Part shown: piece by piece, positions 5,264 to 39,000 of the stretch | How positions within the stretch are numbered: position 1 is the stretch's first letter | Layout of the letters: every line of letters begins with the position of its first letter | DNA from: Magallana gigas | Taxonomy: Eukaryota | Assembly (NCBI RefSeq): GCF_963853765.1 | Contig: NC_088860.1 | Span: forward strand, 10,912,001 to 10,976,000 | Direction of reading: 5' to 3' | Length of the DNA stretch: 64,000 nt | The notes under the pieces: generated by a model | Told to the model about the DNA's origin: nothing | Database searches by the model: none | The model's input: the letters and a program-made list of their open reading frames with translations, nothing else | Program-made: the position numbers and the translations under genes

Positions 5264-7055
5264 TTATTGAAACGAAAAACATTCACCTATAGCTTGCAAT
5301 CCAACCACAAACGCAAATGACCGCCAATTCTGGACAATCTTAGGCGGGACGTGAATGATCTTTGTCGCTCCAAAACCGCTCTGAACAATAGCTTCATAAA
5401 TAATTGTAGAGTAGATGGGGTTTCCTTCTTCCTTATCACAGTATCCTGGGGCAGCGGCACCATGCCTAGTGCTGTGACGTAACTGCATTGCAATGGCAAT
5501 TTGGTTATTGTTATGATTTTTGTACTCCACTTTGCTCATGATTTGCCCATTTGTGACGTTCGCTGTTGTGATGGAGATCTTGTTATTCATCTGATGTGGA
5601 CGAGAGTCTAAAGCATCCAAGGACTCATCGGATGTTTTAGGGGTAGCAGTCTGGTCAAATAAAATTAAAAATTTAAAAAAAAGAAGAGAGAGACCAGTGA
5701 AGGTTTTATTACTTGTTGTAATGAAAATATCAGTACACAGAAACTTGTGCGGATTAATCAGTTTGTCTAAAGGATGTGCCTTAGTTAATATTTATATACT
5801 TTATTACAGAATGCATGGCCCACATAGTAATCTTTAAGTTTACAATACATCTAAATATACTTCAATAATTAAAATTGACATCTTGTCTCAATAAAAAATG
5901 AACTGTATAGTTGTTTTCTATTAAAGTATTGATTTAGAAGCACTTTATATGTCGTAAAAAAAATCATCACCTTTTTTGTTCAGGTTAGAAAGAATTCAAA
6001 AAAATATGCATGTATGTTTGTATTTATAACAGACCAAAACCCTTTGTCACGTGCACATCTATTTGATGTTGACTTTGAACTTGTGCAAAAGAGCAGTCAA
6101 AATTTTACAAGAGCAGGCTTCGTTCAAACTACTTAGGGCTCTCTATTTTCTAATAACTCAATATGAAGAAAAAATCATTCGAATATTTAAAATTGTATAC
6201 TACATGTACCAACTGAAATAACTGACATATTGTTGTTACTGCCTCATACAATGGTAAAACATGTTACAAATACAATGACCCATATCAGTGTATCGTTTTT
6301 GTTAATTAGATAATGTAGGTTTATACATATATTAAGTTATTGATTATCAATATTGTTGAACTGTTATAAGGAAAATAGCTCGATTTTTTCTACCTAGATC
6401 CCCTGCGTGAAAACTTTGTATATTATGCAGTTGAAGAGACACCTTCACCATGCATAATTTAGACATTTGTTTGATTTCCAGTATCTGGCGTTACCTATAG
6501 CTTGATTACGAGTTTTTGCGTCTTACATGTACTAGCATGTTGTCTCTTGATCACCATCTTCATTGCTTTGCATAGATATATACATTTATGTACACGATTT
6601 TTATTTTTTTTTACTGAAATTTAATATTAAAAAAATAAGAATTCGTAAAGCGTCGGTATACGTACCGTTTTAGCAGCACCATTTCTCTGGAACACTTTCA
6701 AGGCCGCCGATGCCACTCTATTACGCGGAGCCCAGCGGGTCAGGTTCATCAGCTTCATGGAGTACCGGCACCCCGGGGCCTGACAGTGGAGGGTCCCCCC
6801 GTCCCCGTGCTTGTTCCTCAGGGGGAACTTGATGCGCCACTCCCGGGACGTCTTGTCCCTCAGCTGAATCAGGCATTCCTCGCAAAACGTGTGGCCGCAA
6901 GGTAAGATCCGGGGCTTCCGGTAATACTGGCAGCAAATACGGCACCGTAGAATGGAATTATAATCCAATATGTCCTCCCCCTCGTCACTTTCCTCGTGGC
7001 CGGAGTCTCCCTTGTCACTCATCCCGGGGGTAAGAGACAGGGCCGTCCGGTTCAT
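5264..7055 (-). CDS. RING-finger (C3HC4-type) protein, ~258 aa, two coding exons
   Basis: Exon 7055-6666 starts at the first in-frame ATG after an upstream TGA. It encodes CRICCQYYRKPRILPCGHTFCEECL...CQAPGC and ends at a phase-0 donor ACG|GTACGT. Exon 5650-5264 follows the acceptor TTTTATTTGACCAG|, is in phase 0 and runs to TAA. Minus-strand AATAAA at 5004-4999. An alternative phase-1 donor (ATAG|GTGAAT at 5287/5286) could extend the gene, so the 3' end is uncertain. Confidence 0.75.
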
Positions 7056-7812
7056 GCGGTTTTTGCGTGTATAAGCTTTCTGACAGATCAATCCGTCTCC
7101 TATTGTTGCAGACTCTGATAAACTGTGTAGTCGGCGGTATTGATTGTTTGATCAGCGCCAGCTGAGAGATTACTTCATATGTCGAAAGCATCTTCATCGC
7201 AGGAAGCGCTCAGTTACCTTATATTGTACACCTTGAATCGATGTCTGGTTTGCAACGTATACAGCATTATTTGTTACACTTTGCTCATTAAGAAGAAAAT
7301 AGCCAGTCATTAAGTCTTCTGATCAACCGGCTAGAAAGCCATAAAATCTTAAATTCGACGGATACATAAACGTTAGCTTAAGGGGCCTTCAGGCGCATGA
7401 GATAGATAAGTCTATGTACTATATATAGACAACGAAAAGCACAAATCGAGCAAGAATATAATGCTAAATGTATGATAGTTATTCTCTAAGGTTTGGACAT
7501 TTATATGTTAGTGGTCATCATTGTGTGGAGGGTAGAGAGGTCACATGTAATCTGTATACATGTGACAATCCATGCAACGTCTCTCCGAATCGAACACCTC
7601 TTTTACTTTTTGGGACTCGGACGCAACGCCTCGACCTCTATGCACTTTAACAATACTGTAGACAGTCAATAACAACCCCTATAAGTAATGATATTGTAAT
7701 CGCTTCCAATCTCTATAATAGTATGCATTTTGTTAAATGCGTCGGCCTTTTGGATATTTTAAATACAAAAACTCTTAAAGAAATCAAACAAAATGTACTT
7801 TTATTCACTCTC

Positions 7813-9129
7813 CTACAATCCAATGCTTCTTAGAACTTCGTTTTCTTTTCTCTCTTTAAGTAAACCATCATAATGAATATAAGGGCGTGTTTGACTAAGG
7901 GCTGTATCGCTACAGCTACCGCTCATCAGACAATGTTTTAAATATAGTGCTAAAGTCACGTGGGACTGACGAAACACGATGGGAATATCCTCGTACAGCT
8001 GACCAGTCAGTTTGAAAATATGTTTCAAAATCTCCTACATAAATGAAATGGAAAAAAAACCTTAATTCATTAATACTAAGTAATATTATACCGGGAAATC
8101 ATTTGCATAAATCAGAAAAATAGCTTAATTCGTTCTAAGTAACATTTCACCCGAAAATCATTTGCATAATTCAGAATCAATTACCAGAAAGTTATACCGT
8201 ATTTAAAATAATTTTAAAAAAAATTCTAAATAAAAAAAGAATATTATCGAAACAATAGAATAAACATTGATCGACCTCTATATTAAGGTAATGGTCCATA
8301 CCGCTGGTATAATTCTAACGACCAATCTCAACAAGATCACGAGAGGTATACATTTGTAAAGTTCATCAGTATAATAAACGGAGGGGGGGGGGGGGGGGTT
8401 ATCGGTGTTTTACAGAACCTTTTCCCCCATAGTAGTTTTCCCACAGTAAAACTAGCTCTATATTTTAAAAGGGTGGGTTTTACATTAGAAAATCACCGGC
8501 ATCCTGCCCTTGTATGATGATTATTTGAGCTCACACTGGCAGAATTTTTTTTAAAAGAAACTTACCATGGTAAGATTGAATGACTTTACCATGCGCGACA
8601 CTAGAGTTTTACGTACAGAAGGGGGAGGGTTGGTAGGAATAATCTGGGTTCTTTTTAGGGGGGATTTGGGAGGTTATTGGTCCAGGTCCGAACCCTTCTA
8701 GATCCGCGCATGTGCACCAATACTAATTTATAAATGTGAATTGTGATTTATATATCAGATTTAAATGTATGAATGCATAAAAATATTTTTTTATATGATT
8801 TATAGTAAATGATATTTTGGAGAGGCGACACACAGCGCAAATTAAGAAAGTTTTCAAAACCTTATAAACAACACCAATAAAATAATTCTATACAAAAACA
8901 ATTTACTTACCTTCATAACTCTCTTGTTTGGAACAATTAAAAGAAACTTTGTTCGACTGGATTTTATAATACCGGTAAGACTTGCAATATATGCATCTTC
9001 TTTGGCGATGTAAAAAGATATCGATGGTGTCTTTTCCTGTAAATCTATGAGAACCCGTCGATTTCTGAAGTCATTGACATCTGTAGGATCAAAAAGCTCT
9101 TTACTGTAAATAACAGTCCCTTCTTCCAT
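7813..9129 (-). CDS. Uncharacterised 134-aa protein, two coding exons
   Basis: Exon 9129-8911 has an ATG with an in-frame TGA three codons upstream and ends at the consensus donor AAG|GTAAGT (phase 0). Exon 7998-7813 follows the acceptor CTGGTCAG|CTG (phase 0) and runs to TAG. AATAAA lies 8 nt after the stop (7805-7800). The joined ORF of 405 nt has no internal stop. I do not recognise a domain. Confidence 0.65.
8590..8712. mobile_element. Short MITE-like element
   Basis: Imperfect terminal inverted repeats CATGCGCGACACTAGA and TCTAGATCCGCGCATG around a G-rich core. It lies in the intron of the orphan gene. No clear TSD. Confidence 0.5.
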
Positions 9130-9283
9130 CTTCTCTCAGCTGTAAATATTGTAAACAAATTCCATGCGTGGCAACCAAACATTGCAGCGTGATAGAATCG
9201 CGCTAAATGACGTCGTTCTTTCATTTGTTACGTCATTTACTATATATTATGATGTCATAATTTACCGATTTTTTTCTGACGAG
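9130..9283. promoter_or_regulatory. Putative bidirectional promoter/5'UTR region shared by the orphan gene (-) and SoxH (+)
   Basis: Only 154 bp separate two divergent ATGs. CRE/ATF-like octamers TGACGTCG (9208), TTACGTCA (9228) and TGATGTCA (9250), plus an RFX X-box-like half site GGCAAC (9170-9175). Confidence 0.55.
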
Positions 9284-12200
9284 ATGCAATCTGAAAGCAA
9301 AGAAAAAATGGAACAGGGGATCAAAAATGGGTTTTCTGTGTACAATAATGACAATACACAAAAACCTACTATGGTAAAATATTTTTACTTTGATAAAGAC
9401 GGGCGACAATTATCAGAGGAGGATGTACAGAAGCTAAAGATAAATGTGAAAGGCAACGTTGTGCTTTCTTCGGGCCTTGCAGGAGCACCCATCGATGGAA
9501 ATTTCTTAGACTCGCAAGGAAACTCCTTTGAAAATGGTACCCGGAAAACAACACCCCAGCAAACTTCTGTTATAAAAACCGAACCCGTTAGACAGAGGTC
9601 TGTCATTCCCAACTTTCAGGCAAGTCATAATGGGCAGATATACCTTGTTACCCCAGATGGCGGATTAAGACCTGCTGAAGAAAGTTCTGAAATAAAAACC
9701 GAACCTGATGACCAAGAGAAGAAAAATACTACGGAGAAAGTTATGCCAGGTTTGATCTTAATTTATGCTTTGAAACGTGAAATTTTCTATTATTCCAAAA
9801 AGTGCTTTAAAAAAATATTTAAAAAAAACCCTTATTTTCAATCTAGGCCAAACTTTTTTTTATTGTGAGGTATTTTCTTAATAAATTATATGAAAATTAC
9901 CAAAATGAGTTATTAGATTTTAAATAAAATTTATCAATGATTTAATACAATATGTATATTTTTATTGCCATAGATCAACATTTTTTGCCAAACGTTTTGA
10001 AAAAAAAACTATAATTTATTTCCATTGCCTAGTGCAAGCCATTTGCAGATCTCTCATCTATAAAAAAAACTGCATACAGCGATGTTATGCATACAAATTT
10101 TCATAACGCTTACGCACGTTACTCAATTTGTATATGCACACACCGCTGCGGTTATGAGACTGTATCTTTCAAAAAATCATGATTCAGTGCTATAATAATC
10201 ATAATAAGTTTATTTATTCCCTCTGTTAATACTCTTTGCAGGAACCAACATAGAATACCGCAACCGTGGAACAAACCATCTGAACAGAAATGGAAAAATA
10301 AAGAGACCGATGAATGCTTTTATGCTGTGGGCAAGAGAATTTCGAGGCAGATTGGCAGAGCAGATGCCCAATGCTTCCAATGCTGAGATCAGTGTGGGGC
10401 TTGGACAAGTGTGGGCTAATCTTCCCACACCTGAGAAACAACATTTCTACCTTGAGGCAGAGCGAGTGAAAAACCAGCACAGGAGAGACTTTCCAGGTAC
10501 TGGTGGTTGACAAATGGTTGAATACTGTACATTATTGAACGCCATACTTTGTTGAATTTTAAGCTCACTGTCTCCCTGGTATGGGAGATAACTCTCAAAT
10601 GGTGAGAGTACCATGTTATTTCAGTCCGATTAAGATTCACCCCACTAAATTAAAATATATGCTTAAACAGTCTAAATTTCAATTAGAATCAAGATTTTTA
10701 AAAAAAGAAAATGAACATCAAGAAAAACCAAAAATCTTAAATGAATGTTGAGACAAATATGTTATATTAAAATGGTGATGCATGGGGATTAAAAAGGTAA
10801 AATGAGCTTAGCCTTTACAATACTGATCAATTTTGAATTATCAGGTTGGATATATCAACCAAACATCACAAAACGTCAGAACTCGAAAGACTCTCAGCAC
10901 GCTCGCATGTGGCAAAGGTTTGTAACCAACAAGGAAGCAGACGGCAAAGAACAAGGCATGGAGACAAAATTTCGACCAATTGCTCCAGCACCTCCAGACA
11001 GCCAGTCTTCTGGTAACATCAGCACAAAGGTCTACTCTACAGGTACGGATGATGATAAATTGTCCCCTCCCAAATCATCTGTCAAATTAGGAGACTCCCA
11101 AATGAGTAACGAAGTAAAATCTAACACAATGACATTAGATGAACAAAAACATCAACAAGACTCTAAGATTGATGCCCAGACCATACAGTCTACTGTGAAA
11201 CAAGTAATTGTTTCATCAAGTTCTCAGCAAAGGGTTTATAACCATCCACTCCCAGTCTCAACATTCAAAGAATTTAAGCAGGATGTGATGTCATCTGAAC
11301 AGTTGAAGAACACTGCAACATGTGTCCATAATGGACCCCAGTTACAAACAGGTCAGCAAATTTACTAGTATATAATCTGATTTTACATATGAAATTGATC
11401 AGAATTTGCGAATAACCTTTATTTTGTTAATACATCCTTAAAGATATCAGAAAAGATGTAGCTCCCATTATGTCTACTCATACCCAGCCTGCTCCCGTAT
11501 CTCGCTCTCACATGATGTACAGAGACCCAGTAGCAATGGCAGCAACTGGAACACAGGTTGAATACACAAGGGGGTTCAGCAAACAACCAATACCAGTCCC
11601 TGGGTACCAAACCGCTAGACCTGGACGACCCACTTCTTATGGCTTGAAATATGGTATGCATATATTACTCATATAGCCATTACTTTGAGGAAACATTCTA
11701 AATTATTGTTTAATATGCAATTTTAAAAAAGAGCCTTTTCATAAACATACTGGAAATAGGTACAATATATTTAAACTTGTTAGATAACCAAATTTGCTCT
11801 TATTTTTAAAGTCTTTTTGGCCAATATGACATTACAACCCTTTATGGTACAGGGTCCTGTATTCTTTCAACTGGGAATTTTTCATCAAAACATTGCTCTT
11901 TTGGAAAAAATAGTTTAACAAATATGGCTCAATGCAAGTTAGCAAAAAACAATTAATAGTCTATACAGTTTTCTTCTTTCATTTGCATATTACATGTAAT
12001 ATGTATTAAATCATTAAATTAATGTTTTCATCATAAAACCATACTTAACGACCACTGACTGATATTTTAATTAACATATATATAAGGATGCCTCACTCAG
12101 CATAGATACAAAATCGGCATCCTATCTTTTATAACACAATACAAAACAGTTATTTTGGGAATTTTTCAATTAGATTTTGAGGAAAAACAGTCAGATTTCA

Positions 12201-15200
12201 ATTGGTAATGGATCCTTCTACAGTACCCCATACATTATATTTCTATAGATTACACACCACTGTCCAAGATCAGTTCGTTTGTTCCCATGACAAGACCAAG
12301 GGTTTCATCAACAGTAGTTACACCATCGACAGGACAAATTAATCAACAACCTCCACAGAAACTCCTCACTCAGGAGACATTGGGAGCACATTTACCAGTA
12401 AATCAGACAATGCTGAATCAGTTTGCCCCACATCAAGGGAATGAAACACAGCAGAAAACAAAACAAGCAGTGCACCAGATGACAGCTACTGAAAGGTACA
12501 TATATATAAAATGAAATTATTTTCAATTGCTACAAAAAGTTTGTAATTTTTTTCAGTCATTCCTGTGCACTCCTCTAAGGCCATTGCAAGTTTTTTCTTT
12601 GTTTAGCATCCACCCAAAACTCAAAAACCTGTCTTTCTATCAGGAAAAAAACCCACAAACCTTAGAAAAAAACACAACTTTAAAGGTTCAACAAAATAAA
12701 ATTTGTTATATATTTTGAAGTAATTTCTTCATTTTGCGACAAAAATACAAAAAAAACAAATACCTACTATATGATTTCCATTTTGAATGTTTTTATATTT
12801 GATTTCTGATCCAGATTTAAAAATGCAATCCTGAGCCCAACATATGAAAAAGCGATCTAATTTTATGAATAACAATTGTGTTTTGTTTTTTTTTTTTAAA
12901 ATTTTTACATCTCAAAACCAATCTGTCCGCGGACGCTAAACATAGAAAAATCTTGGAATGGCCTAGATATCTAACCTGCTGCTTTATGATTTCCAATTTT
13001 TAAAAAATAGATGAAAAAAAAAGCCATTAAGAGAAAAGATTTAATTGGACATAGTACATGTACAATAAATGTATACAAAAAATAAAAAGCTCAATGTGTA
13101 AAGTGTTATTTTGCGCACTTGTGTGGGATATTATATCTAGTATATATACATGTATGCAGTGAATACTGTAGAAGCAGATCGATATTTTCATAGCTGCCAT
13201 AATTAAATTTTGCTTGATTTGTAATCTAAAATGATTTTGTGAAAATAAAATTTGGTCCCTAAAAAATAAAAAAATAAGCAATTAAATGAATAACGTATTG
13301 TGACCTGGTTCTCTTGCAATAAAGGCCTTAATCAAAATTAAATAAAGTTTAATTCAGCTATAATCTCCAATATTTTGAAATGAGAATGCATTATGAACCA
13401 TGTACAAACTGAAGAAAAATATAATCACCTGGCCAGGGAGAGTTGACACTCAAAAATTTGTTATACTTTATATCAAATCTCCAGTACTTTGTAGAATGGA
13501 ATTCAAGATGCTGTATAAAATTATATTCTTTTGGTTCAATATATACATATACTAGTTCATATTCACTTGTGTATACGAAATCAATGTAATAGAAATATGT
13601 TGAATGATGGCATTCTCATATATCGGTCATGATTACAGCCATTCCCCTGACGACCTACAGCAGCCAATAGCCATACCCACACTTCCTAACCTTCCAGACA
13701 AGGCTGACCCCCTGTGGCCATTCCCCTTCCCTGGGGTGGAACAAGGGCCACAGACCCATCTCTTGTACCAAGGCAAGTACTTATACAGCGTTTTAATGTA
13801 GAATCATCCAAAGTGGACTTATGGGTAGCTGATATAATCAACTTAAAGGCAGGCTCAACCCATAAGTGTTTCCATTTATTAGCACATTTGGATTTATTTA
13901 GACCTATGTATAACTGTTTTAATAACACTTTATTGTAAATGAAACAAAGCAAAAGGTTACCACTAAAATTAAGTCAAGTACATTTATGTACATATTTCAT
14001 AAATAAACTCTATACTTGAAGAAATTGTCTATCAATTTGAATTTAATTTCATTTCCAATTACTTTAAAGTACCGATAAAACACAAAAATTAACCCCTCAT
14101 TTGATTCCATGATAAACATTGGAACTTTGATCATGATGTGCTCTTTTTAGTAATGTGTAATAGAAGTAACTATAATATTTAACTTGTAAGATTTGTAAAA
14201 GTTTTTAACGGGTTTTCCAAAGGAAAAATCTGATTATTGAAATGGTGAAAATGGTGAGTGGGCAGCTGACAAAAGGGTACCCTTATTGTACAGATAACTC
14301 CTCCTACAGTTTTCAAGATAGGAATTTGTTCTTTTGCAGATCAATCATACATATATCAGAGGTGTGCATATTGTTAGGATTTTGATTTCTGATGATTTGT
14401 GAAAAAATACCAGCTGTTGAGCTTAGTCATTTTCTCGCAGAATACTGCGTATAGGGTACTCCTATTGTACAAATAACTCCTCCTACAACTTTCAAGATTG
14501 GAAATTGTTGTTTTGCATATCAATTGTACATATATTATAGATGTGCATATTACTTGGATTCTGATTTTTGATAATTTATGAAAAAAATACCAGCTGTTGA
14601 GCTAAGTCATTTTCTCACAGAATATTGCGTATTGGGTACTCCATTTCTCTGGATAGGTACTATTAAGTAGTGTTTAGCTATTCAGACTTGGCATGGATAC
14701 AGCTCACATAAAAAAAAAACCTGGTTTGCTGTCACATTGACAACTTTTTACTTGTCTAGAATTTTTAATTTATTTGAAAAACACAGTATACGCATCAGCT
14801 TTATGTTTCCCCCTTTCTTTATTAGGTAGTGTTCCCGAAACTCATACCAAGAGTGTTTTATCTGATCCGTATGCTCCGTTCTACTTTGATAATTACATCA
14901 ATCCAGTCAGACCGACGGAGCTGCAGGTTGATGTTAATGGGTATGTTATTCTTAGTTCGAATATATACAATACACATGTAACATATAATTGTTTTCAATT
15001 TGATCAAAAAATTTCTTTACTCTGTTCAATGGTTTTAATTTTAGAGATGCTTTTTCCCCCTTTGACAGATGGCAACAATACCTCAATGACGACCATACAA
15101 ATGCTCCCATCAAACAAACAGCCAGCTATTTCCCCACGGTGAAGCAGTGTCCTAGTGACATTGAAATCTGTCCCTCCCCAGCCTCCCACACCCTCAGCAG

Positions 15201-18272: not shown

Positions 18273-21200
18273 TTACTCTTGTGGTGGGAGATGCTTCCAG
18301 TCGATGATGGACTTCCCCTCCTTTTTTAAGAGTTCATTACACTTAGAGAAATGCTTACAGCCAAAATATCCCCGATGTGCAGACAATGGTGATGGATGAA
18401 CTCCTGTTAACACATGGTGCTTCTTCTGCAATTCAAAATTCCAAAAGTTATATTCAATTTGAGTTAGAGTAAAAAAGGAATAAGGAATCATTCTTTGAGT
18501 ATTATGAGGTGATAATTTTGGTCGGGGCCTGATCAAATCCAATAAAGCAAAAATGTTTAAAGAATGATTCCTTATCACTTATATTTATATAATTTTAAGC
18601 TATCGTACGATTAAATATAAGCAAACCCCACTGGTGCCTCAATTTGGCAGCATTTGAAGTTATGGGTTTTATAGTACAAAATCGATATGTAGAGTTATCA
18701 CAGGCAAATACACTAGAAAATGTAAATATTCGCAAATAAAACTAAATCAAAAATTACTTAAATCAGAGGATAATGGTATATACAAAAGATAATGGTATAT
18801 ACAAAAGACCTACCATTAAAGACCAATAACACTTTATGTAAGTATGTTCCATACTCAAGAGCAAAGGTCAGCTGATGTATTTTAAGGGCAATGGATGATC
18901 TTAAAAACCATTACCTATATCGGAGCTAACAATTCTTATCCAACAAGCGGTGTTCGGAATCAAGTTGTTACCTTGTCAATGTGTGCACCTTTCTTCTGGG
19001 CATACGACCCCCATAACATGAATACCAGTCCCTTCTTATTTTTGTTGAGCCATGAGATGACAGCATCGGTGAATTTCTCCCAGCCCTTGTCCTTGTGGGA
19101 GTTGGCTTGTCCGGCTCTTACAGTCAGACAGGCGTTCAGTAGTAATACCCCTACAACAGGCAGAGGTCATAGTGCTGTACAATACAGACACAGATCACAT
19201 CAACAAAACAGTACAGGTTACATCCACTTTGCTGTACATGAATATGCAGAGTCTGTTTTGTGGCTTATTTTATCTACAGTCATGAATGGCAGACTCCAGG
19301 TCTTCAGATTTGTCAATTGTAGACACTATTATGATTTAGTCGTCAATCAAATTAAATTTATGAAAAGAAAAAACATAAGACAAATAGATTATATCATTTT
19401 AATCTCTAACAGCTTAAATGATTTATTAACCAACAAGCCAAAAATTCCTACTCCTTAAGGTTAAAAAAAAAAAGAGAAAAAATCTTTGTCTAAACCTTCA
19501 GTGACCATGGTTGTGCAAATGGTTGTACAGCATATTACACAATTCAGGAAATTTGACTACTGTTGTCTTAATTATCTAAACATGCTAAAGGGGCACAGCT
19601 CTGCCATATGCGGGTCACTTACCCTGATTTGCCCAGCCTATCAGTGTACCATGTCCAGGATGAGAGAACCCAGGGATGTCCTCGGTCAGTTCCTTGTACA
19701 TATTCTGTAAACTGGACAATATAAAATGGTCAACGTAAACAACAATTAATGCTGAAATAGGTTTAAAAAGAAAGAATTTGCACTAAAAATTTTGATATAG
19801 ATATTTAAACTGTAGTGATTTAAGACCCATGAATACATGCACTTGAAAGGTGCACATAAAAGGAGATTAGAGAAGGCATATTACAATACATCTAGTTATT
19901 TTTTATACAAGTAGAATCTTTTCTCAAAGTAATCTTGTGGACAAAAAATTTAGTGCCAAATTCTTTATAATATACATGTAGTGACTGAGTAAAATAAAAA
20001 ATCAGTATCAAAAGGTGTGGTACTTCATTGTACTAAGAAAAATATATTTATCAATCCCCCTCATAGAATTCCTTACAAGTAAATAGTGAAGAGGTTGGGG
20101 CTTCAAATCACCTTAACATATTGAAGACAATCAAGATAATTTAACAGTACCTTGGTGGAGGGGGGACTCCCTTTTGAACACTAAAACATAAACCTGAAAT
20201 TATAAGTAAATGATAGCATTGGTACAGTGATAGATTTAAACATTTTACACAGACTTCATTCATGACAGTACATGTACATGCCATTTATTTATGTGCAGGC
20301 ATTTTAGATTTGTTTAACAAGTCAAACTACTGTTACAGTAGTTTAATTAAGAACTAAGAACTCTACCATGTGCTTGTTTGGGTCCATGATATGGGTCTTG
20401 TCCAAGAATTACAACTTTAACCTGAATTATAAAAAATACGTCTTCATGCAAAAATTGAAATTTGAAAGCCTTGCATTGCTCAATGCAAACTGTTAACAAA
20501 CAATAACAACATTTCTTCTAAATGAAACTATCCATGTATCAGGTACAGTACACGATGCTTATTTGTAAGCCGGCTAAGTTAAACGAGAATGTTTCACAAT
20601 GTCATTTGTTAAAGTTAGATTCATTTATTGTAACAATCTATAATTAAGTCAGATACCGTATATCAGGTTTTTTCCGTGTCATGTTTTTTCCGCGAATCAG
20701 AGCCTAGAACGGTATATAAAATTTACGCGAATCAAATTTTCACTTTTTCAAATACACATTGAAAAAATAATTCACGATTGTTCAAACCTGTGAGGTGAGA
20801 GCTAGGGAAAAGTATCTTAATTCAGACAATGAAACCATATACACGATCTCCTTAATGTGAAATAATTCCCGATAATAATTTAATAGATCATGTACCGTTA
20901 CATATACCAGTAGCTCAGGTATAAATAGACATCGGTTTATGCAAGGAAAGCGACCGTTTTAATTAGCTTGTCAATGGATTATCAAATAAACAACGAGGCT
21001 TATAAATCTATTATCTGGTGTTTGTTCTACGATCCTGCAATTTTTACCTCTAACTAAACTAACTGAACACAGTTCACCATACTTTTACTTACCTGTTTAC
21101 TTTATCAGGAAAGAGAAAATTCTATTACTAAAACAAAACTTTGTATCAAATTTACGCTGATTTATTTTTTCCGCGATTCGGAAATCGTCGCGAACAAAGC

Positions 21201-23795
21201 GGAAATAGCATACACGCGAAAAAACCTTATATACGGTATATTATAACTAATTGTTATACTTTCATGTTAAATACTGAAATCTGATTGGTTAAGACGCAGT
21301 TAATAATATTTACTATTACCCTCAGCGTTAGCAACGCACTTGGCAACGGGTAACATTAAAAAATGTTACATGCGCGAAAATTATGCGCGTACGGTTCGCT
21401 GTAGAATTCACGTTATTCCTATATAAAAGCAGTAAAATTTTCTTAAAAATTTTAAAAAAGACATTCAGTATAACAAAATAAATAGTGCCTGTTTGGGAGG
21501 ATAACAGTTGAAATTGACACCCCTCGAAAACCATTGTCAACCTCCGCTTCGCGTCGGTTGACAATGGTTTTCTCGGGGTGTCAATTTCAACTGTTACCCT
21601 CCCAAACAGGCACTATTTATATAATAACAAGTGTAAGGTAAGTGAAGGAGTCTTACTTTGTCAATGGTGCAGTAGTTTGTCCAGCTGAAGACATCATGTG
21701 CGGGGGGGTAGATTGTATTCTTGCTTCTCTCCGCCATCACAAACTTTGATAGCTAAAACATAAAATTTATTTGAAAAGTACAAATATGACACTCTTTGCA
21801 CATCATATCATACATGTGTAGGACACCTACAAAATGCAATGGGTCTCTAAAGCCTGATTGTCAAGTAAAAGTCTGTTGTTGAGTTTATCTCCAGTAATTC
21901 CAGTAATAAAGTTATCGCAAATAATAGTTGGTTTAAAGTATATTGAAAAATTTCTATCTCTCACAACATGACAAATCCTGTACAGGTAATTCATCAGGTA
22001 CTCACCTCTGTAAAGTATTGCTTGGAGAACTCGGGCTCTAGAGCTTTAAACCATGATGAACCAACATCCACCAAGAGACCGTTAGATGTCTTGGCTGCAA
22101 GTTTTATCCTGGCTGCTAACTTGTTCTGTTCTATTTTAGATTTCTGCTCTGGTGACAATGCCGTGGGGGTTGGGGGTGGTGAGGGAGGGGTCTGGGCATT
22201 CGGACTGAGTTCTATGTTCTCCTTTACTGATGTTGTATCTTCACCCTTCTCATCAATTTTACGTTTCTTGGGACTTGGTGTTTTAGACTGAGGAATAAAA
22301 ATCATTACATTGAAGACTTCAAAAGCTGTTCTTCTAACCACTTTTGACATTGTCTCTGACTCAGTAATTAATTTCATTATCATCCTATCATGACATGATA
22401 AAATAATTTAATTCAACTTTTTACAGAATAATATGTGTTAAAGACTACTCCCATCCAAGAATTAGAACCCATGCAGCCATGGGAATAATTAAACCCTTTC
22501 TTGGTAAATGCATTATGAGCTCTTTCATGTTTTGGCTAAATATAACCTATCGGCAATTGTTTGAATAATTTATACATAAACTTAGTAAAACTATATCAAT
22601 AGGTTAACAGGTGTGTCAATGTCGGTCGGTCAGAATATAAGGTCTCCTTAGCTCTGAACTTGGTCAGTTAGTGCAGGCATAGGGATTGAGTCCTGGTTGA
22701 GACTAAAATTCAATTGACTTTTTACCACTGGTTTCATAAGTCTCCCTGTAGGTCTAGGTGAGCAGTACCACATGCAGTTACTGTGAAAAAGTTAATGTTC
22801 AAATCAAAAGTTTTAGGCATTAAATCAATTTGTAGCATTTTTGTTTTATAAATTCCTGTTTTATAAATCATAACTACTGTTTAAGTACTGGTAAATTTGT
22901 TTTATATTTGAGCCCTATCATTAGGAGCCTTAATCTTTGTGCCCTAATATAGTGCAGCAGGCCCTGATACTGGAGCCTGCTGCCCTTATGGTGTAGAAGG
23001 CCTAAATACTGGAACCTGCTGCCCTAATGGTGTAGCAGCCTCGATACCAGAGCCTGCTGTTCTAGTATAATGACCTAACAGCATTAGGTCTCTGGGCAAA
23101 GTATATATAAGGGGAGAGAGAGAGAATGTGAGAGGAGAGAGAGAGAACTAGAAGCGAGAGCGGATTGGCATTTGATGTACAACTTGTTCTTTTAATACAC
23201 TTGAATCCAAAGAAACTTGCATTTGTCTTCGATAAATTTATTGAGATCTACTGGTTCTTAATATGCAACAAAGAACCCACAAAAGTTTGTGATGCTGGAG
23301 CAAGGAAATCCTTATGCATTGACTCTGGGAGCCCTTAAGATTTAATTAATCTAAATTAAAATGGGAATTTTTTTCAATCATCATAAACTTTGTCTCTTGA
23401 ACGAAATTTTTTTCATTTGATTCTTTACACCCGATCATGAAATCCTAAGATTTGACACAATTTCATATGATTATGTGATCATGCATGCTAGGAGGAAATG
23501 TACATATTCTAAAATCCCTCATCTGTGGTTTAAATACAATTAAACAAAGATCGACGATGTTTGCTCTCTACAATAAAATACACGACTGTATATTCATTCT
23601 CTTTTTTCATATAAGTTCTGTTTTACACGCATTGAGCTTGTTTATTTGGGAGCGAAACCCATATATAGGCATTGTATACTTTTTGCATTTGTTTTTGGAA
23701 ATAAATAAACTGATTACCACAGTATCTCCATTACTAATCACTCGCTTGTTGGTTGATTGTGTGAAAAATGAGGATATTTTAGCTTGTCCACTCAT
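18273..23795 (-). CDS. UNG: Uracil-DNA glycosylase (family 1, UNG2-like nuclear form), 324 aa, 8 exons
   Basis: complement join(23795-23718,22287-22006,21752-21657,20421-20367,20193-20151,19711-19623,19150-18972,18425-18273) = 975 nt, all introns GT-AG and phase-consistent. It has an N-terminal PIP box ([11 protein letters not shown]), the catalytic GQDPYH motif, [21 protein letters not shown] and HPSPLS. Confidence 0.95.
18480..18575. mobile_element. Internally deleted fold-back mini-element, in the last UNG intron
   Basis: Perfect 17-bp terminal inverted repeats ATAAGGAATCATTCTTT (18480-18496) and AAAGAATGATTCCTTAT (18559-18575). Its left half matches the reverse complement of the right half of the copy at 32817-32960. 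Confidence 0.75.
20656..21236. mobile_element. MITE with TA target duplication (Tc1/mariner-pogo type), in UNG intron 3
   Basis: TA|CCGTATATCAGGTTTTTTCCGTGT ... ACACGCGAAAAAACCTTATATACGG|TA. CpG-rich subtermini and no coding capacity. Confidence 0.75.
21478..21620. repeat. Long near-perfect palindrome (65-bp arms, 13-nt loop), probably part of a non-autonomous fold-back element starting near 21240
   Basis: Left arm 21478-21542 and right arm 21556-21620 are reverse complements with 3 mismatches. The loop is TCCGCTTCGCGTC. Confidence 0.9.
22960..23065. repeat. 39-bp minisatellite, ~3 degenerate copies, in UNG intron 1
   Basis: GGCCCTGATACTGGAGCCTGCTGCCCTTATGGTGTAGAA at 22960, GGCCTAAATACTGGAACCTGCTGCCCTAATGGTGTAGCA at 22999, and GCCTCGATACCAGAGCCTGCTG at 23038. 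Confidence 0.7.
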
Positions 23796-36016: not shown

Positions 36017-39000
36017 TCAGCCATTAATTAATTCCACATAATTAGCGGGAAACATTCCGTGATTTCCATCTGGTCCCATCCCTGTCCACCATCCCTCGTC
36101 GATTTGCTCAATGTTTGTAATGATTTGATCCGGATCAAAGGAAATTTCTGATTCATCAGCTGTAAAAACGAAATTGAAGAAATCTTTATCCTAATTTATC
36201 CAGTAAAAATTGTACAGTCACCTATATCTTACATGTAATTTAAATCGATACATGTATTCAACAAATAAATACTCTCAAGTAGGTTTATAATTAAAAAAAA
36301 CATTATTGAATAATTTATAATAGATATAAATATAAAATGAAAATCAAGTAATATGTGTAGGTACATGTATCTTTAAAAACATGTCCAACATATAGCTTTC
36401 TTTATTAATAATAAGTTACTTTTATTCAGTCAATACAACTGAGCAAGGTTGTCGTTGGAATAGCACATATTGAATTATAATACTGACAAATATTCCCACC
36501 TTAAAGCAATTTTTTCACACACTTATAGGTCAGTACAAGATAAACTACTAGCATCAGTTGACAATTGCAATACTACATATACTGTGGTTTCATTAATTTT
36601 CGTGGGTATCAATTTTCTTGGATTTTCTGAAAACCACAGTTTCAAGGACACGTAATTTCGTGGCCAATGATCCTATCAATACAAAGTGTTAGTTGAAATT
36701 GAACTTCAATGAACATTTAATTTCGTGGATCAACTTAACAACGAAATCCACGAAAATTGGTATTGAGCGAATATTGATGAAACCACAGTAGCTTGATAAT
36801 CGTAACCCCATACTTACAAGCTTGATAATCGTAGACGGCTCTGGCACACAGTCCGTGCTCAGGGAGGATTCCGTAGCCACTCAAGTCCTGGGTCTGTTGC
36901 TGGTCGTACTCTTCGTGGCCGTTCTGCATCTCCTGGGTGTGCTGTTCCTCCTCTGGGGGGTGATGGGACTGGACTGCCGGGATATATGTTTCAGCGTTAT
37001 CATCTAACACAACAGAAATACATCATTTATTAATCATTCATTAATTACGTGAAAACATCAAGGCTTAATAAACTTTATGGTGTGTCAACTGACACAAAAA
37101 ATACATGTGAAGAATTCAACCTTTAAACTGCATCTGATACAAAAGAATTTGATTCTTTTAAAATAACAGTCAAACCTGGTGTTGTAGATACTCGGGTACA
37201 ACAATGTGTAAAAAGTTAAATCTTATGAAAAATGTAAATTTGTCATAGTCGCGATACCATTCAATCTATGCTCTCAGTGATTGGTACATTTATTAAACAC
37301 TGCATTGAGTCTTTACCATTTCTGTAGATATTTTATCCTTTTTAGTAGAAAATGAATGTACAATGACATAAATGATCAAATAATAGTTAAAAGCATTTTT
37401 TTTTATAAGTCTTGGAGTAAGAATTACAATACATGTTTTAGTAGATACACATGCACAATCATGGCAGAAAAAGTGAGCAAGCTCACATATCCCACACTCC
37501 CTCATTACTTGGAAACACTTCTCATATTGAATGGCATGGTACACATTAAAAACAAATAATAATTTGATAAAGAGCATAACTCGCAAAACATCATGATCGC
37601 AGATAAAAAAAATCCTGCAAATATGCACAGTAACAAGCCAGAATTTCCAGAAAAATGATAGAATTCCTTTTTTCTCGTATTATACACCTCGATCTATAAC
37701 CATTGTGTCCTATATACCTACAAAGTTTACACAAAATCCTTGCAGTGGTTAAAGAGAAGCTGTGCTACAAACTGTTCAATACTATATATTCAATAAAGGA
37801 CCAAAGTTTTAAGTCCTAAAGGGCTAAAATTCCTGGAAGAGTTCAGGAATTGGAATTTCCTGATCATATTCACATCTATACATTGTGTCTTAAATACCAA
37901 CAAAATTCCTTGCAATAGTTGAAGAGGAGTTGCACTTACGAAAAAAAAAGGACTGATGGACTGACTGACCAACTGACAGACTCACTGATAGACAGGTCAA
38001 AATCATATACATCTCAACTTTGTTGCTCGGGGTGTAATAATACATATTTATTACATGCAAATCAACCTACATGCATATCAATTGTAATCGTCAAGGCAAG
38101 AGTTAAAAAGAGAATGTACATGTACTAGTCATTTGAGCAGAAGAAAGTACTTAAAGGACTATGTGCGGTATGGTCAAATATCTGCCCCCGATTTCAACCA
38201 ATTTTTAAATAGTATCGTATAAAAATAAAATCTTCACAAATCATTGTATAGAGGATGCCTATAACTTTGATATTGATTTTAGTCATCATTGCTCATTCGC
38301 TTTATATATATAACGTCACCTAAATGACCTAATTCCCGCAAATTTGCAAACAAATAAAAATATTCTCATTTTTGCACAATATTTTGCATTCGGAAGTATA
38401 GAGCGCAGCTCTGCTCAAGTGCGATTTTAACGTATGTTTTTCTTCAGAGTGTTATACACGTTATACTAAAAAATGGTACTTGAGCAAGCCTGCGCTCGAT
38501 GTTTCCCAGTCGAAAAACCATCGGAAAACACCCATATTTTGCTACAAAACACCAATTTATCAAAATAATGCAATCTTCATGACGTCATTCCTACATTATG
38601 ACGTCACTGTGGTGATAACCTTTTACACCTTTACTTCCGATATGATTTTAACTATCTCTCACTTTAATTTTAAAGCTCTTTCTAAAACTTTGATTTTGGG
38701 GGCAAAAAATGCATAAAACCGCACATAGTCCTTTATATTTTCTTTATATTCTGCAGAATTCAGACAATACATGTAGTTAAAAATGTAAATCCATCTTTAA
38801 TAAATAAAAGAATTGTACGAACAGTCTGCATGCAATTTTAAACATCAGATATTGTCTTAATGTGGATGTACAGTATGTAACTTACAATTTGCATAGGTTT
38901 CTAACAGAAAAATTAATTATACATACATTAAATTAAACCTTAATTCAAATACTTTTATTTAAACAAGAATGACCAATGAATACAAGATAATTTAATGAAA

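What the first reader, a model, noticed from the sequence alone, without database searches (positions are those of the whole stretch)
9130..9283. Head-to-head SoxH/orphan module sharing a 154-bp region with phased CRE-like sites and an RFX half-site
Seen: two divergent ATGs lie 154 bp apart. Between them are three CRE/ATF-like octamers at 9208, 9228 and 9250 (spacing 20 and 22 bp, about two helical turns) and GGCAAC at 9170. Established: mammalian SOX30, CREM-tau and RFX2 are core regulators of spermiogenesis, and a testis-biased Sox30-like SoxH has been reported in Pacific oyster. Inference: SoxH and the orphan are co-transcribed from a CREB/CREM- and RFX-type male-germline promoter. This would make the orphan (and perhaps the RING gene just downstream) an undescribed component of bivalve spermatogenesis or sex differentiation, and would hint at deep conservation of this regulatory logic. 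A minus-strand acceptor-like TTTACAG at ~9146-9140 means the orphan may have an extra 5' exon that overlaps SoxH antisense.
Basis: partly seen in the sequence, partly recalled or inferred. Interest (0 to 1): 0.72.

Follow-up and report, generated by a model that had tools for sequence, protein, structure and literature searches.

The report
Shared CRE-rich promoter of SoxH pair
In an oyster genome, the sperm-development gene SoxH and a small unknown testis gene are transcribed outward from one 110-154-bp promoter, and both the gene pairing and a cluster of cAMP-response-type (CRE) sites are conserved from oysters to scallops.

Summary
The two divergent ATGs lie 154 bp apart. CRE-like octamers sit at 9208, 9228 and 9250, and GGCAAC at 9170.

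**Supported**
- RNA contigs end at 9144 (unknown gene, minus strand) and 9256/9261 (SoxH). The two transcripts therefore start at most about 111 bp apart.
- The unknown gene is a real two-exon gene encoding 146 aa (K1RTS8_MAGGI). It is single-copy and has no Pfam, PDB or fold match.
- Its orthologues sit head-to-head with SoxH, 134-223 bp apart, in Saccostrea, Pinctada, Pecten, Argopecten and Mizuhopecten.
- Every one of these spacers holds 2-4 CRE-like sites (P 0.0002-0.009 each).
- In Argopecten the same region is a published testis-open chromatin peak with promoter activity. That paper mentions neither the CREs nor the divergent gene.
- Oyster RNA-seq lists CgSoxH and its numbered neighbour CGI_10006949 as testis-specific. 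That this neighbour is the unknown gene is inferred.

**Not supported**
- The RFX half-site is at chance level and found only in Crassostrea.
- The 20/22-bp phasing is not kept outside Ostreida (17/22 bp in Pinctada, 13-26 bp in scallops).
- No antisense 5' exon is seen.
- The RING gene is expressed where the pair is silent, and it neighbours the pair only in true oysters.
- Mouse Sox30 expression needs neither CREM nor RFX2.

**Verdict**
This is a conserved, probably CREB/ATF-driven, bidirectional testis promoter. It is a new member of a known kind and of moderate interest.

The parts
9130..9283 (.). ATG-to-ATG spacer (154 bp) holding the shared bidirectional promoter. It is single-copy and CpG-rich, with CpG obs/exp 1.85 against 0.44 for the whole window.
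9208..9215 (.). CRE-like site 1, TGACGTCG (7/8). It reads TGACGTCT in the sister Crassostrea lineage and is absent in Saccostrea.
9228..9235 (.). CRE-like site 2, TTACGTCA (7/8). The same octamer is present in Saccostrea and in Pinctada.
9250..9257 (.). CRE-like site 3, TGATGTCA. It reads as the perfect palindrome TGACGTCA in the sister Crassostrea lineage and in Saccostrea. The CpG-to-TpG change is present in all 6 same-species sequences compared. The site overlaps the 5' end of the SoxH RNA contigs.
9241..9249 (.). TATA-like TATATATTA between sites 2 and 3, conserved in Saccostrea. It sits 7-20 bp upstream of the observed SoxH contig starts, too close for a canonical TATA box at about -30.
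9170..9175 (+). It is at chance frequency, has no X-box partner and is not conserved outside Crassostrea.
9151..9157 (+). GTAAACA, a forkhead-type core (the motif class is from my own knowledge). It lies at the same offset from the unknown gene's ATG in Saccostrea and occurs inverted in Pinctada. Expected 0.05 per 154 bp. It lies just beyond the observed 5' end of the unknown gene's transcript.
8910..9144 (-). Unknown gene, exon 1. The CDS runs 9129 down to 8910 (73 codons plus 1 nt). The RNA contig reaches 9144.
7585..8033 (-). Unknown gene, exon 2. The CDS runs 8033 down to 7816, with the stop codon at 7815-7813, followed by 3' UTR. It is joined to exon 1 across an 876-bp GT..AG intron. The product is 146 aa.
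9256..9746 (+). SoxH exon 1. RNA contigs start at 9256 and 9261. The ATG is at 9284. The upstream in-frame ATG at 9164 lies outside the observed contigs.
10239..10493 (+). SoxH exon 2, holding the first part of the HMG box (Pfam PF00505, E 3e-16).
10842..11351 (+). SoxH exon 3, which completes the HMG box. The following intron is 11352-11443. It is GT..AG once an A/G difference at 11444 between the window and the RNA contigs is allowed for.
11444..11652 (+). SoxH exon 4. Exon 5 starts at 12248 and the gene runs on beyond the stretch on which reads were laid.

Best explanation
The interval is the core of a single, compact bidirectional promoter. It drives the oyster Sox30 orthologue CgSoxH rightward and a 146-aa, two-exon gene of unknown function (K1RTS8) leftward.

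Shown: the two transcripts begin no more than about 111 bp apart, and both are abundant in the same RNA libraries. The head-to-head pair with a 134-223-bp spacer is conserved across oysters, pearl oysters and scallops. Each spacer carries a significant cluster of 2-4 TGACGTCA-type elements.

Inferred: the CRE cluster is the main activating element and is bound by a CREB/ATF-family bZIP dimer that recruits the transcription machinery in both directions. Testis restriction comes from something else, such as chromatin opening, other factors or SoxH feedback, because CRE sites alone are active in many cell types. The partner protein acts in the male germline alongside SoxH.
For: - RNA contigs from two libraries end at 9144 (unknown gene) and at 9256/9261 (SoxH). 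Their introns are canonical.
- Depths are 870 and 420 in X1, and 55 and 140 in X2. Both genes have zero reads in two polyA libraries that do express the RING gene.
- Orthologues of the unknown protein are head-to-head with an HMG-box gene in Saccostrea echinata, Pinctada imbricata, Pecten maximus, Argopecten irradians and Mizuhopecten yessoensis.
- Those HMG-box genes are SoxH orthologues: 55-85% identity over the HMG-box exon, with the same intron position.
- The Argopecten gene matches the published AiSoxH (1,010 aa, about 8 kb).
- CRE sites with at most one mismatch: 3, 2, 2, 3, 3 and 4 observed against 0.08-0.23 expected, P from below 0.0002 up to 0.009. CGTCA half-sites are 13-35 times denser, and ACGTCA hexamers 15-59 times denser, than in the surrounding loci.
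- The site that is degenerate here (TGATGTCA) is the perfect palindrome in the sister Crassostrea lineage and in Saccostrea.
- The spacer is a small CpG island (obs/exp 1.85 against 0.44).
- In A. irradians, the 324 bp upstream of the SoxH ATG is 2.76-fold more open in testis than in ovary and has promoter activity in HEK293T and TM3 cells (PMC13219418). That span covers the whole shared spacer plus the start of the divergent gene.
- File S1 of PMC4232546 lists CGI_10006950 (CgSoxH) at 94/16/57 RPKM in three testes. It lists CGI_10006949 (no SwissProt hit) at 76/17/3 RPKM in testes and 0 in every other tissue.
Against: - No direct TSS mapping exists. Contig ends only bound the 5' ends.
- The tissue of libraries X1 and X2 is not known to me, and these runs were chosen because they hold this stretch.
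- CGI_10006949 = the unknown gene is inferred from adjacent numbering, the lack of a SwissProt hit and the fact that SoxH's other neighbour is UNG. It is not proven.
- The ratio of the two transcripts varies about five-fold between libraries and is discordant in one of three published testes (3 against 57 RPKM). Co-regulation is therefore not strict.
- No binding data exist for any factor.
- CRE spacing and order are not conserved between oysters and scallops.
- In mouse, Sox30 does not depend on CREM.
- A CRE-driven fragment that is active in HEK293T cells does not explain testis specificity.
Confidence: 0.65

Rival explanations
1. A CREM-tau plus RFX2-type male-germline promoter, with helically phased CREs and an X-box half-site, co-regulates SoxH, the unknown gene and perhaps the RING gene. 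The unknown gene has an extra antisense 5' exon. The arrangement reflects mouse-like regulatory logic conserved from deep in animal evolution.
For: The CRE cluster and the gene pairing are real and conserved. A CREM-bound half-CRE lies 87 bp upstream of the mouse Sox30 TSS.
Against: - RGYAAC is at chance level (0.20 per 154 bp), no X-box is present, and the site is absent in the other five genera.
- Spacing is 20/22 bp here, 22 in Saccostrea, 17/22 in Pinctada and 26/13 or 21/25/13 in scallops.
- The RING gene is expressed where the pair is silent, and it is a neighbour only in Ostreidae.
- The transcript runs through the supposed acceptor, and that motif is missing in Saccostrea.
- Mouse Sox30 expression is unchanged in Crem-null and Rfx2-null testes.
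- CREM is a vertebrate paralogue (my own knowledge), so a CREM-tau equivalent in bivalves is unproven.
Confidence: 0.07
2. The conserved ACGT-core octamers are bound by another factor class rather than by CREB/ATF1-type proteins. Candidates are an ATF2/Jun-type, CREB3-like/OASIS-type or PAR-bZIP factor, or a germline-specific paralogue. Alternatively they act mainly as unmethylated CpG elements that keep the promoter open in the germline.
For: Several variants are not canonical: TTACGTCA, TGATGTCA (the reverse complement of TGACATCA), TGGCGTCA and CGACGTCA. The spacer is a CpG island in an otherwise CpG-poor region. Many bZIP families share this core (my own knowledge).
Against: A perfect TGACGTCA is present in every lineage except the window's own species, where it was lost by a single transition. 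The scallop fragment is active in mammalian cells, which contain ubiquitous CREB/ATF1.
Confidence: 0.2
3. The leftward transcript is a non-coding by-product of the SoxH promoter (a promoter-upstream antisense RNA), and the 146-aa ORF is fortuitous.
For: The protein has no Pfam, PDB or fold match, and the structure models have low confidence.
Against: - The ORF has protein-level homologues in seven other pteriomorph species. They share an approximately 70-aa block with 14 invariant residues.
- The position of the single intron is identical in all six genomes checked.
- The RNA is spliced and abundant.
- The gene is single-copy.
Confidence: 0.03

Closest known systems
Metazoan bidirectional (divergent) promoters
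   Same: Two protein-coding genes lie head-to-head with 5' ends well under 1 kb apart (here at most 111 bp). They share a CpG-rich spacer, are expressed in the same samples, and the pairing is conserved in evolution.
   Different: This one serves two tissue-restricted (testis) genes rather than housekeeping genes. It is very short and dominated by one motif class. No TSS mapping or bidirectional reporter data exist.
CRE/ATF-site promoters of post-meiotic male germ-cell genes (mammalian CREM-tau targets)
   Same: TGACGTCA-type sites lie within about 100 bp of the start of genes expressed in spermatogenic cells. A CREM-bound half-CRE lies 87 bp upstream of the mouse Sox30 TSS.
   Different: Here there are 2-4 sites per promoter and they serve two genes. 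The binding factor is unknown. Mouse Sox30 itself is not CREM-dependent.
AiSoxH 'testis-enriched promoter' of Argopecten irradians (PMC13219418)
   Same: It is the orthologous region. The published 1-324-bp upstream fragment contains the whole 210-bp shared spacer with its three CRE-like sites.
   Different: The paper treats it as a one-directional SoxH promoter. A search of its main text found no mention of CREB, CREM, RFX, bidirectionality or a neighbouring gene. The scallop spacers also carry 5-6 ATTGT/ACAAT cores, the SoxH DAP-seq motif, whereas the oyster spacer has one.
RFX X-box
   Same: One hexamer, GGCAAC, matches the half-site pattern RGYAAC.
   Different: There is no inverted partner, the frequency is at chance level, and the hexamer is not conserved outside Crassostrea.

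Membership tests
Bidirectional promoter | Two genes on opposite strands, head-to-head, with 5' ends less than 1 kb apart | tested here: met
   The ATGs are 154 bp apart. RNA contig ends lie at 9144 and 9256.
Bidirectional promoter | Both genes are really transcribed and spliced | tested here: met
   Spliced contigs for both genes in two RNA libraries. Protein models.
Bidirectional promoter | Co-expression of the two genes | tested here: inconclusive
   Both are high in X1 and X2 and absent in X21 and X22. CgSoxH and CGI_10006949 are both testis-specific. However, the identity of CGI_10006949 is inferred and the transcript ratio varies.
Bidirectional promoter | Shared cis-elements are needed for both directions | not testable with these tools
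   This needs a two-direction reporter with mutated sites.
CRE / ATF site | TGACGTCA palindrome or CGTCA half-site close to the TSS | tested here: met
   Three 7/8 matches at 9208, 9228 and 9250, between or at the two contig ends.
CRE / ATF site | More frequent than chance and conserved in orthologous promoters | tested here: met
   P ranges from below 0.0002 to 0.009 in each of six species. A perfect palindrome is present in five of them.
CRE / ATF site | Bound and activated by a CREB/CREM/ATF bZIP protein | not testable with these tools
   No binding data. There is only the indirect observation that the scallop fragment is active in HEK293T and TM3 cells.
RFX X-box | Inverted repeat GTNRCC N0-3 RGYAAC | tested here: not met
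   There are no X-box matches anywhere in the window. Only a single half-site is present.
RFX X-box | Conservation in orthologous promoters | tested here: not met
   RGYAAC is absent from the Saccostrea, Pinctada, Pecten and Argopecten spacers. Mizuhopecten has one at an unrelated position.
SoxH / Sox30 (the plus-strand gene) | HMG box of the Sox type | tested here: met
   PF00505 at E 3e-16, with the RPMNAFMLW motif.
SoxH / Sox30 (the plus-strand gene) | Orthology to characterised SoxH genes, including the conserved intron inside the HMG box | tested here: met
   55% identity to the Argopecten gene that matches the published AiSoxH, with the intron at ...DFPG|W in all species. CgSoxH has been described as testis-specific. 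I built no Sox-wide tree myself.
Any known protein family (the minus-strand 146-aa gene) | Significant match to a Pfam model, a solved structure or a predicted fold | tested here: not met
   Pfam gave none. The best PDB profile hit has E 0.19. Foldseek best E-values are 0.57 (Swiss-Prot models), 2.6 (PDB) and 1.3 (AFDB clusters). Atlas scores are at most 0.80.

The most novel reading that the evidence does not exclude
SoxH and its 146-aa divergent partner form an ancient, obligatorily linked testis unit. The partner would be a so far unrecognised spermiogenesis factor, possibly working with SoxH. The linkage might extend beyond bivalves. From memory only, human SOX30 also has a small, testis-enriched, uncharacterised gene (C5orf52) head-to-head with it. 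If the two small proteins are remote homologues, the pair would date back to early bilaterians.
Probability: 0.1. Interest if true: 0.8.

Novelty: new member of a known kind. Interest (0 to 1): 0.5.

Why it matters
SoxH is the leading candidate male regulator in oysters and is required for spermiogenesis in scallops, yet what switches it on is unknown.

This analysis gives three testable handles:
- A 110-150-bp promoter core with conserved CRE sites, which points to cAMP/CREB-ATF signalling as an input to SoxH.
- A conserved divergent partner gene that is testis-specific and entirely uncharacterised. It has a defined conserved domain and is a direct RNAi or knock-out candidate.
- The published scallop 'SoxH promoter' is in fact a shared, two-gene promoter. 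This matters for interpreting reporter, ATAC and genome-editing experiments at this locus.

The analysis also removes three unsupported ideas: the RFX site, the antisense exon and the involvement of the RING gene.

Tried and rejected
**Function of the 146-aa protein**
- Pfam on the exons and on four orthologues found nothing.
- ESM Atlas gave only sub-threshold primase-C-terminal look-alikes at 0.80 or below. I rejected them as noise.
- AlphaFold2 of the Saccostrea orthologue reached pLDDT 52. The conserved domain alone reached pLDDT 66.
- Foldseek against Swiss-Prot models, PDB and AFDB clusters, and a PDB profile search, gave no credible match.
- I could not fold or search the window's own spliced 146-aa protein as one piece. 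It has no reference, and I did not type it in. Orthologues and P0012:1-99 served as proxies.

**Deeper relatives**
- An exhaustive phmmer search and a profile search found only Ostreida and Pectinida.
- A search with SoxH exon 1 found only Crassostrea-level relatives plus one 58% hit whose contig is not on record.
- Mussels, clams, gastropods and vertebrates therefore remain untested.
- The human SOX30-C5orf52 idea comes from memory only. Papers gave only gene lists, and a Sox30 synteny paper names only Thg1l and Adam19.

**Other checks**
- The second CRE pair at 38580/38599 turned out to be part of a high-copy repeat, not a promoter.
- The apparently non-canonical 92-bp SoxH intron becomes GT..AG once an A/G polymorphism at 11444 is allowed for.
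- The 145 N in the window were left untouched.

Full report
**1. Observation.**
- The minus-strand start codon is CAT at 9127-9129 and the plus-strand ATG is at 9284-9286. The spacer between them is 9130-9283, 154 bp.
- TGACGTCG starts at 9208, TTACGTCA at 9228 and TGATGTCA at 9250. GGCAAC is at 9170. The minus-strand TTTACAG lies at 9146-9140.
- Across the whole window, one-mismatch matches to TGACGTCA are no more frequent than in shuffles (15 against 15.8).
- Three such sites inside 154 bp is unusual. The expectation is 0.08 and P is about 0.0002 under a first-order Markov model of the spacer itself.
- The only other cluster in the 64 kb, two perfect palindromes at 38580 and 38599, lies inside a repeat with over 1,000 candidate copies in this genome. 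The SoxH spacer is single-copy.
- The spacer is a small CpG island, with CpG obs/exp 1.85 against 0.44 for the window.
- The GGCAAC is unremarkable. RGYAAC is expected 0.20 times per 154 bp, and no full X-box occurs anywhere in the window.

**2. The two genes.**
The organism is Magallana (Crassostrea) gigas or a very close relative. Exon 1 of the minus-strand gene is 99% identical to K1RTS8_MAGGI.

I laid contigs of two RNA libraries (X1, X2) and raw reads of two polyA libraries (X21, X22) on 6500-12400.
- SoxH runs as exon 1 from 9256/9261 to 9746, then 10239-10493, 10842-11351 and 11444-11652. Exon 5 starts at 12248.
- All SoxH introns are GT..AG. The 92-bp intron that the tool printed as TC..GA becomes canonical once an A/G difference at 11444 is allowed for.
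- Exons 2 and 3 encode a Sox-type HMG box (PF00505, E 3e-16).
- The upstream in-frame ATG at 9164, which ORF callers use, lies outside the observed contigs.
- The minus-strand gene has exon 1 at 8910-9144, joined across an 876-bp GT..AG intron to exon 2 at 7585-8033. It encodes 146 aa.
- Depths are 870 (unknown gene) and 420 (SoxH) in X1, and 55 and 140 in X2.
- The two contig ends, 9144 and 9256, only bound the true 5' ends. They leave at most 111 bp between the transcripts. That stretch contains sites 1 and 2, and site 3 lies at the edge.

**3. The antisense exon and the RING gene.**
- The exon-1 contig continues colinear with the genome for five bases past the proposed AG acceptor. Nothing else covers 9145-9255.
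- The acceptor-like motif is missing in Saccostrea. No extra 5' exon is supported.
- The RING exon (6666-7529) has a lower and separate depth. It is covered by minus-strand-type reads in X21 and X22, where SoxH and the unknown gene have none.
- A RING gene follows the pair only in Crassostrea and Saccostrea, not in Pinctada or scallops.
- The RING gene is not part of the conserved unit.

**4. The unknown protein.**
- It has no Pfam match and is single-copy in its genome.
- An exhaustive phmmer search and a profile search found homologues only in Pteriomorphia. These are Saccostrea echinata and S. cucullata, Pinctada imbricata, Pecten maximus, Argopecten irradians, Mizuhopecten yessoensis and Ylistrum balloti. 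All are annotated as uncharacterised.
- The homologues share a C-terminal block of about 70 aa with 14 invariant residues.
- The position of the single intron is identical in all six genomes checked. It is therefore a genuine, conserved protein-coding gene and not promoter noise.
- Structure models are weak: pLDDT 52 for the full length and 66 for the domain, mostly helical.
- Neither Foldseek (Swiss-Prot models, PDB, AFDB clusters) nor a PDB profile search gave a credible relative. Its biochemical role remains open.

**5. Conservation of the pairing.**
- In all five other genomes I fetched, the orthologue lies head-to-head with an HMG-box gene.
- ATG-to-ATG distances are 134 bp (Saccostrea), 223 (Pinctada), 187 (Pecten), 210 (Argopecten) and 196 (Mizuhopecten).
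- These HMG genes are SoxH orthologues. Identity over the HMG-box exon is 85%, 62% and 55-57%, with the same intron at ...DFPG|W.
- The Argopecten gene (1,010 aa, about 8 kb) matches the published AiSoxH.
- By my own knowledge, the oyster-scallop split is several hundred million years old. A spacer of 223 bp or less kept for that long argues for functional coupling.

**6. Conservation of the motifs.**
- Every spacer contains 2-4 sites within one mismatch of TGACGTCA. P values are 0.0002 (window), 0.004, 0.009, 0.002, 0.002 and below 0.0002.
- CGTCA half-sites are 13-35 times denser in the spacer than in the surrounding locus, and ACGTCA hexamers 15-59 times denser.
- All species except the window's own carry at least one perfect palindrome.
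- Site 3 here (TGATGTCA) is TGACGTCA in a sister Crassostrea lineage and in Saccostrea. The CpG-to-TpG form is present in all six same-species sequences compared.
- A roughly 50-bp block spanning site 2, a TATA-like run and site 3 is almost identical between Crassostrea and Saccostrea, although their unknown proteins are only about 54% identical.
- Site 1 is absent in Saccostrea.
- Spacing is 20/22 bp here, 22 in Saccostrea, 17/22 in Pinctada, and 26/13 or 21/25/13 in scallops. Helical phasing is not a conserved property.
- RGYAAC is absent from four of the five other spacers.
- Two further patterns are worth noting. GTAAACA lies at the same offset from the unknown gene's ATG in Crassostrea and Saccostrea, and occurs inverted in Pinctada.
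- ATTGT/ACAAT, the published SoxH DAP-seq core, occurs 5-6 times in each scallop spacer (P 0.001-0.013) but only 1-2 times in oysters and Pinctada.

**7. Outside evidence.**
- PMC13219418 reports that the 324 bp upstream of the AiSoxH ATG is 2.76-fold more accessible in testis than in ovary. It drives a reporter 2-2.8-fold in HEK293T and TM3 cells.
- In my locus L010 that fragment spans the entire 210-bp shared spacer plus the first 114 bp of the divergent gene.
- Text searches of that paper for CREB, CREM, RFX, bidirectional, neighbor and adjacent found nothing.
- File S1 of PMC4232546 lists CgSoxH (CGI_10006950) as testis-specific, at 94/16/57 RPKM in three males. It lists CGI_10006949, with no SwissProt hit, as testis-specific at 76/17/3 RPKM and zero in ovaries and seven somatic organs.
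- SoxH's other neighbour in the window is uracil-DNA glycosylase. CGI_10006949 is therefore most likely the unknown gene, but I could not verify the identifier.
- No paper in the searchable library deals with the CgSoxH promoter.
- In mouse, Sox30 expression is unchanged in Crem-null and Rfx2-null testes, although a CREM-bound half-CRE lies 87 bp upstream of its TSS (PMC5732304).

**8. Mechanism.**
- Shown: two spliced, abundant, divergent transcripts start at most about 111 bp apart. The pairing is conserved, and the CRE clusters are conserved and enriched.
- Inferred: the CRE cluster is the main activating element and is bound by a CREB/ATF-family bZIP dimer that loads the transcription machinery in both directions.
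- Also inferred: testis restriction comes from chromatin state or additional factors, because the scallop fragment already works in unrelated mammalian cells. Possible inputs are SoxH feedback through ATTGT cores in scallops, or a forkhead-type input at GTAAACA in oysters.
- The variable ratio of the two RNAs suggests extra gene-specific control. The ratio of unknown gene to SoxH is 2.1 in X1 and 0.39 in X2, and one published testis shows 3 against 57 RPKM.

**9. Novelty and score.**
Bidirectional promoters and CRE-bearing germ-cell promoters are well known, and SoxH itself is well described. Three things are new:
- the conserved SoxH-partner gene pair;
- the partner's protein family;
- the recognition that the published scallop SoxH promoter is a shared, CRE-rich, two-gene promoter.

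This is a new member of a known kind, useful to the field rather than surprising. The most novel reading not excluded is that the pairing predates bivalves. It rests only on my recollection of a small head-to-head neighbour of human SOX30 and could not be tested here.

Noticed in passing
window 38520-38680: Two perfect TGACGTCA palindromes lie 19 bp apart (38580, 38599) inside a very high-copy repeat. The first look found 1,092 candidates in the genome, and the scored copies are 95-98% identical. This is probably a young mobile element that spreads CRE pairs around the genome.
   Followed up: partly
window 9151-9157; L007 and L008 spacers: A forkhead-type core, GTAAACA, lies 22 bp from the unknown gene's ATG in both Crassostrea and Saccostrea, and occurs inverted in Pinctada. 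It is expected 0.05 times per 154 bp. It could be a FOX input (FoxL2 or FoxJ1 type) to the SoxH promoter. This was not tested.
   Followed up: partly
L009, L010, L011 spacers (scallops): Each spacer has 5-6 ATTGT/ACAAT cores, including an inverted pair ACAATC..N..GATTGT. ATTGT is the published AiSoxH DAP-seq core, so this suggests SoxH autoregulation in scallops. The oyster spacer has only one such core.
   Followed up: partly
window 6627-7529 (minus strand): A RING-finger gene lies directly downstream of the unknown gene. A low-depth RNA contig (7497-7670) bridges the unknown gene's 3' end and the RING exon, so there is some read-through or UTR overlap. The RING gene is expressed in polyA libraries where SoxH and the unknown gene are silent.
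   Followed up: partly
window 18273-22383 (minus strand): Uracil-DNA glycosylase exons lie tail-to-tail downstream of SoxH. I recognised them from the translated ORFs only.
   Followed up: no
window 10046-10242 (SoxH intron 1): Reads from all four libraries pile up here on both strands, with loose ends at 10133 and 10199 and shared variants at 10150 and 10187. This looks like a transcribed repeat inside the intron rather than SoxH RNA.
   Followed up: no
window 11444: There is an A/G difference between the window and both RNA libraries at the first base of SoxH exon 4. It would change Asp to Gly, and it made the splice junction look non-canonical.
   Followed up: yes
window 9147-9160 against L001/L005/L006: The sister Crassostrea lineage carries 4-bp and 4-bp insertions next to the observed 5' end of the unknown gene's transcript. 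The CRE-bearing half of the spacer is almost invariant between the two lineages.
   Followed up: partly
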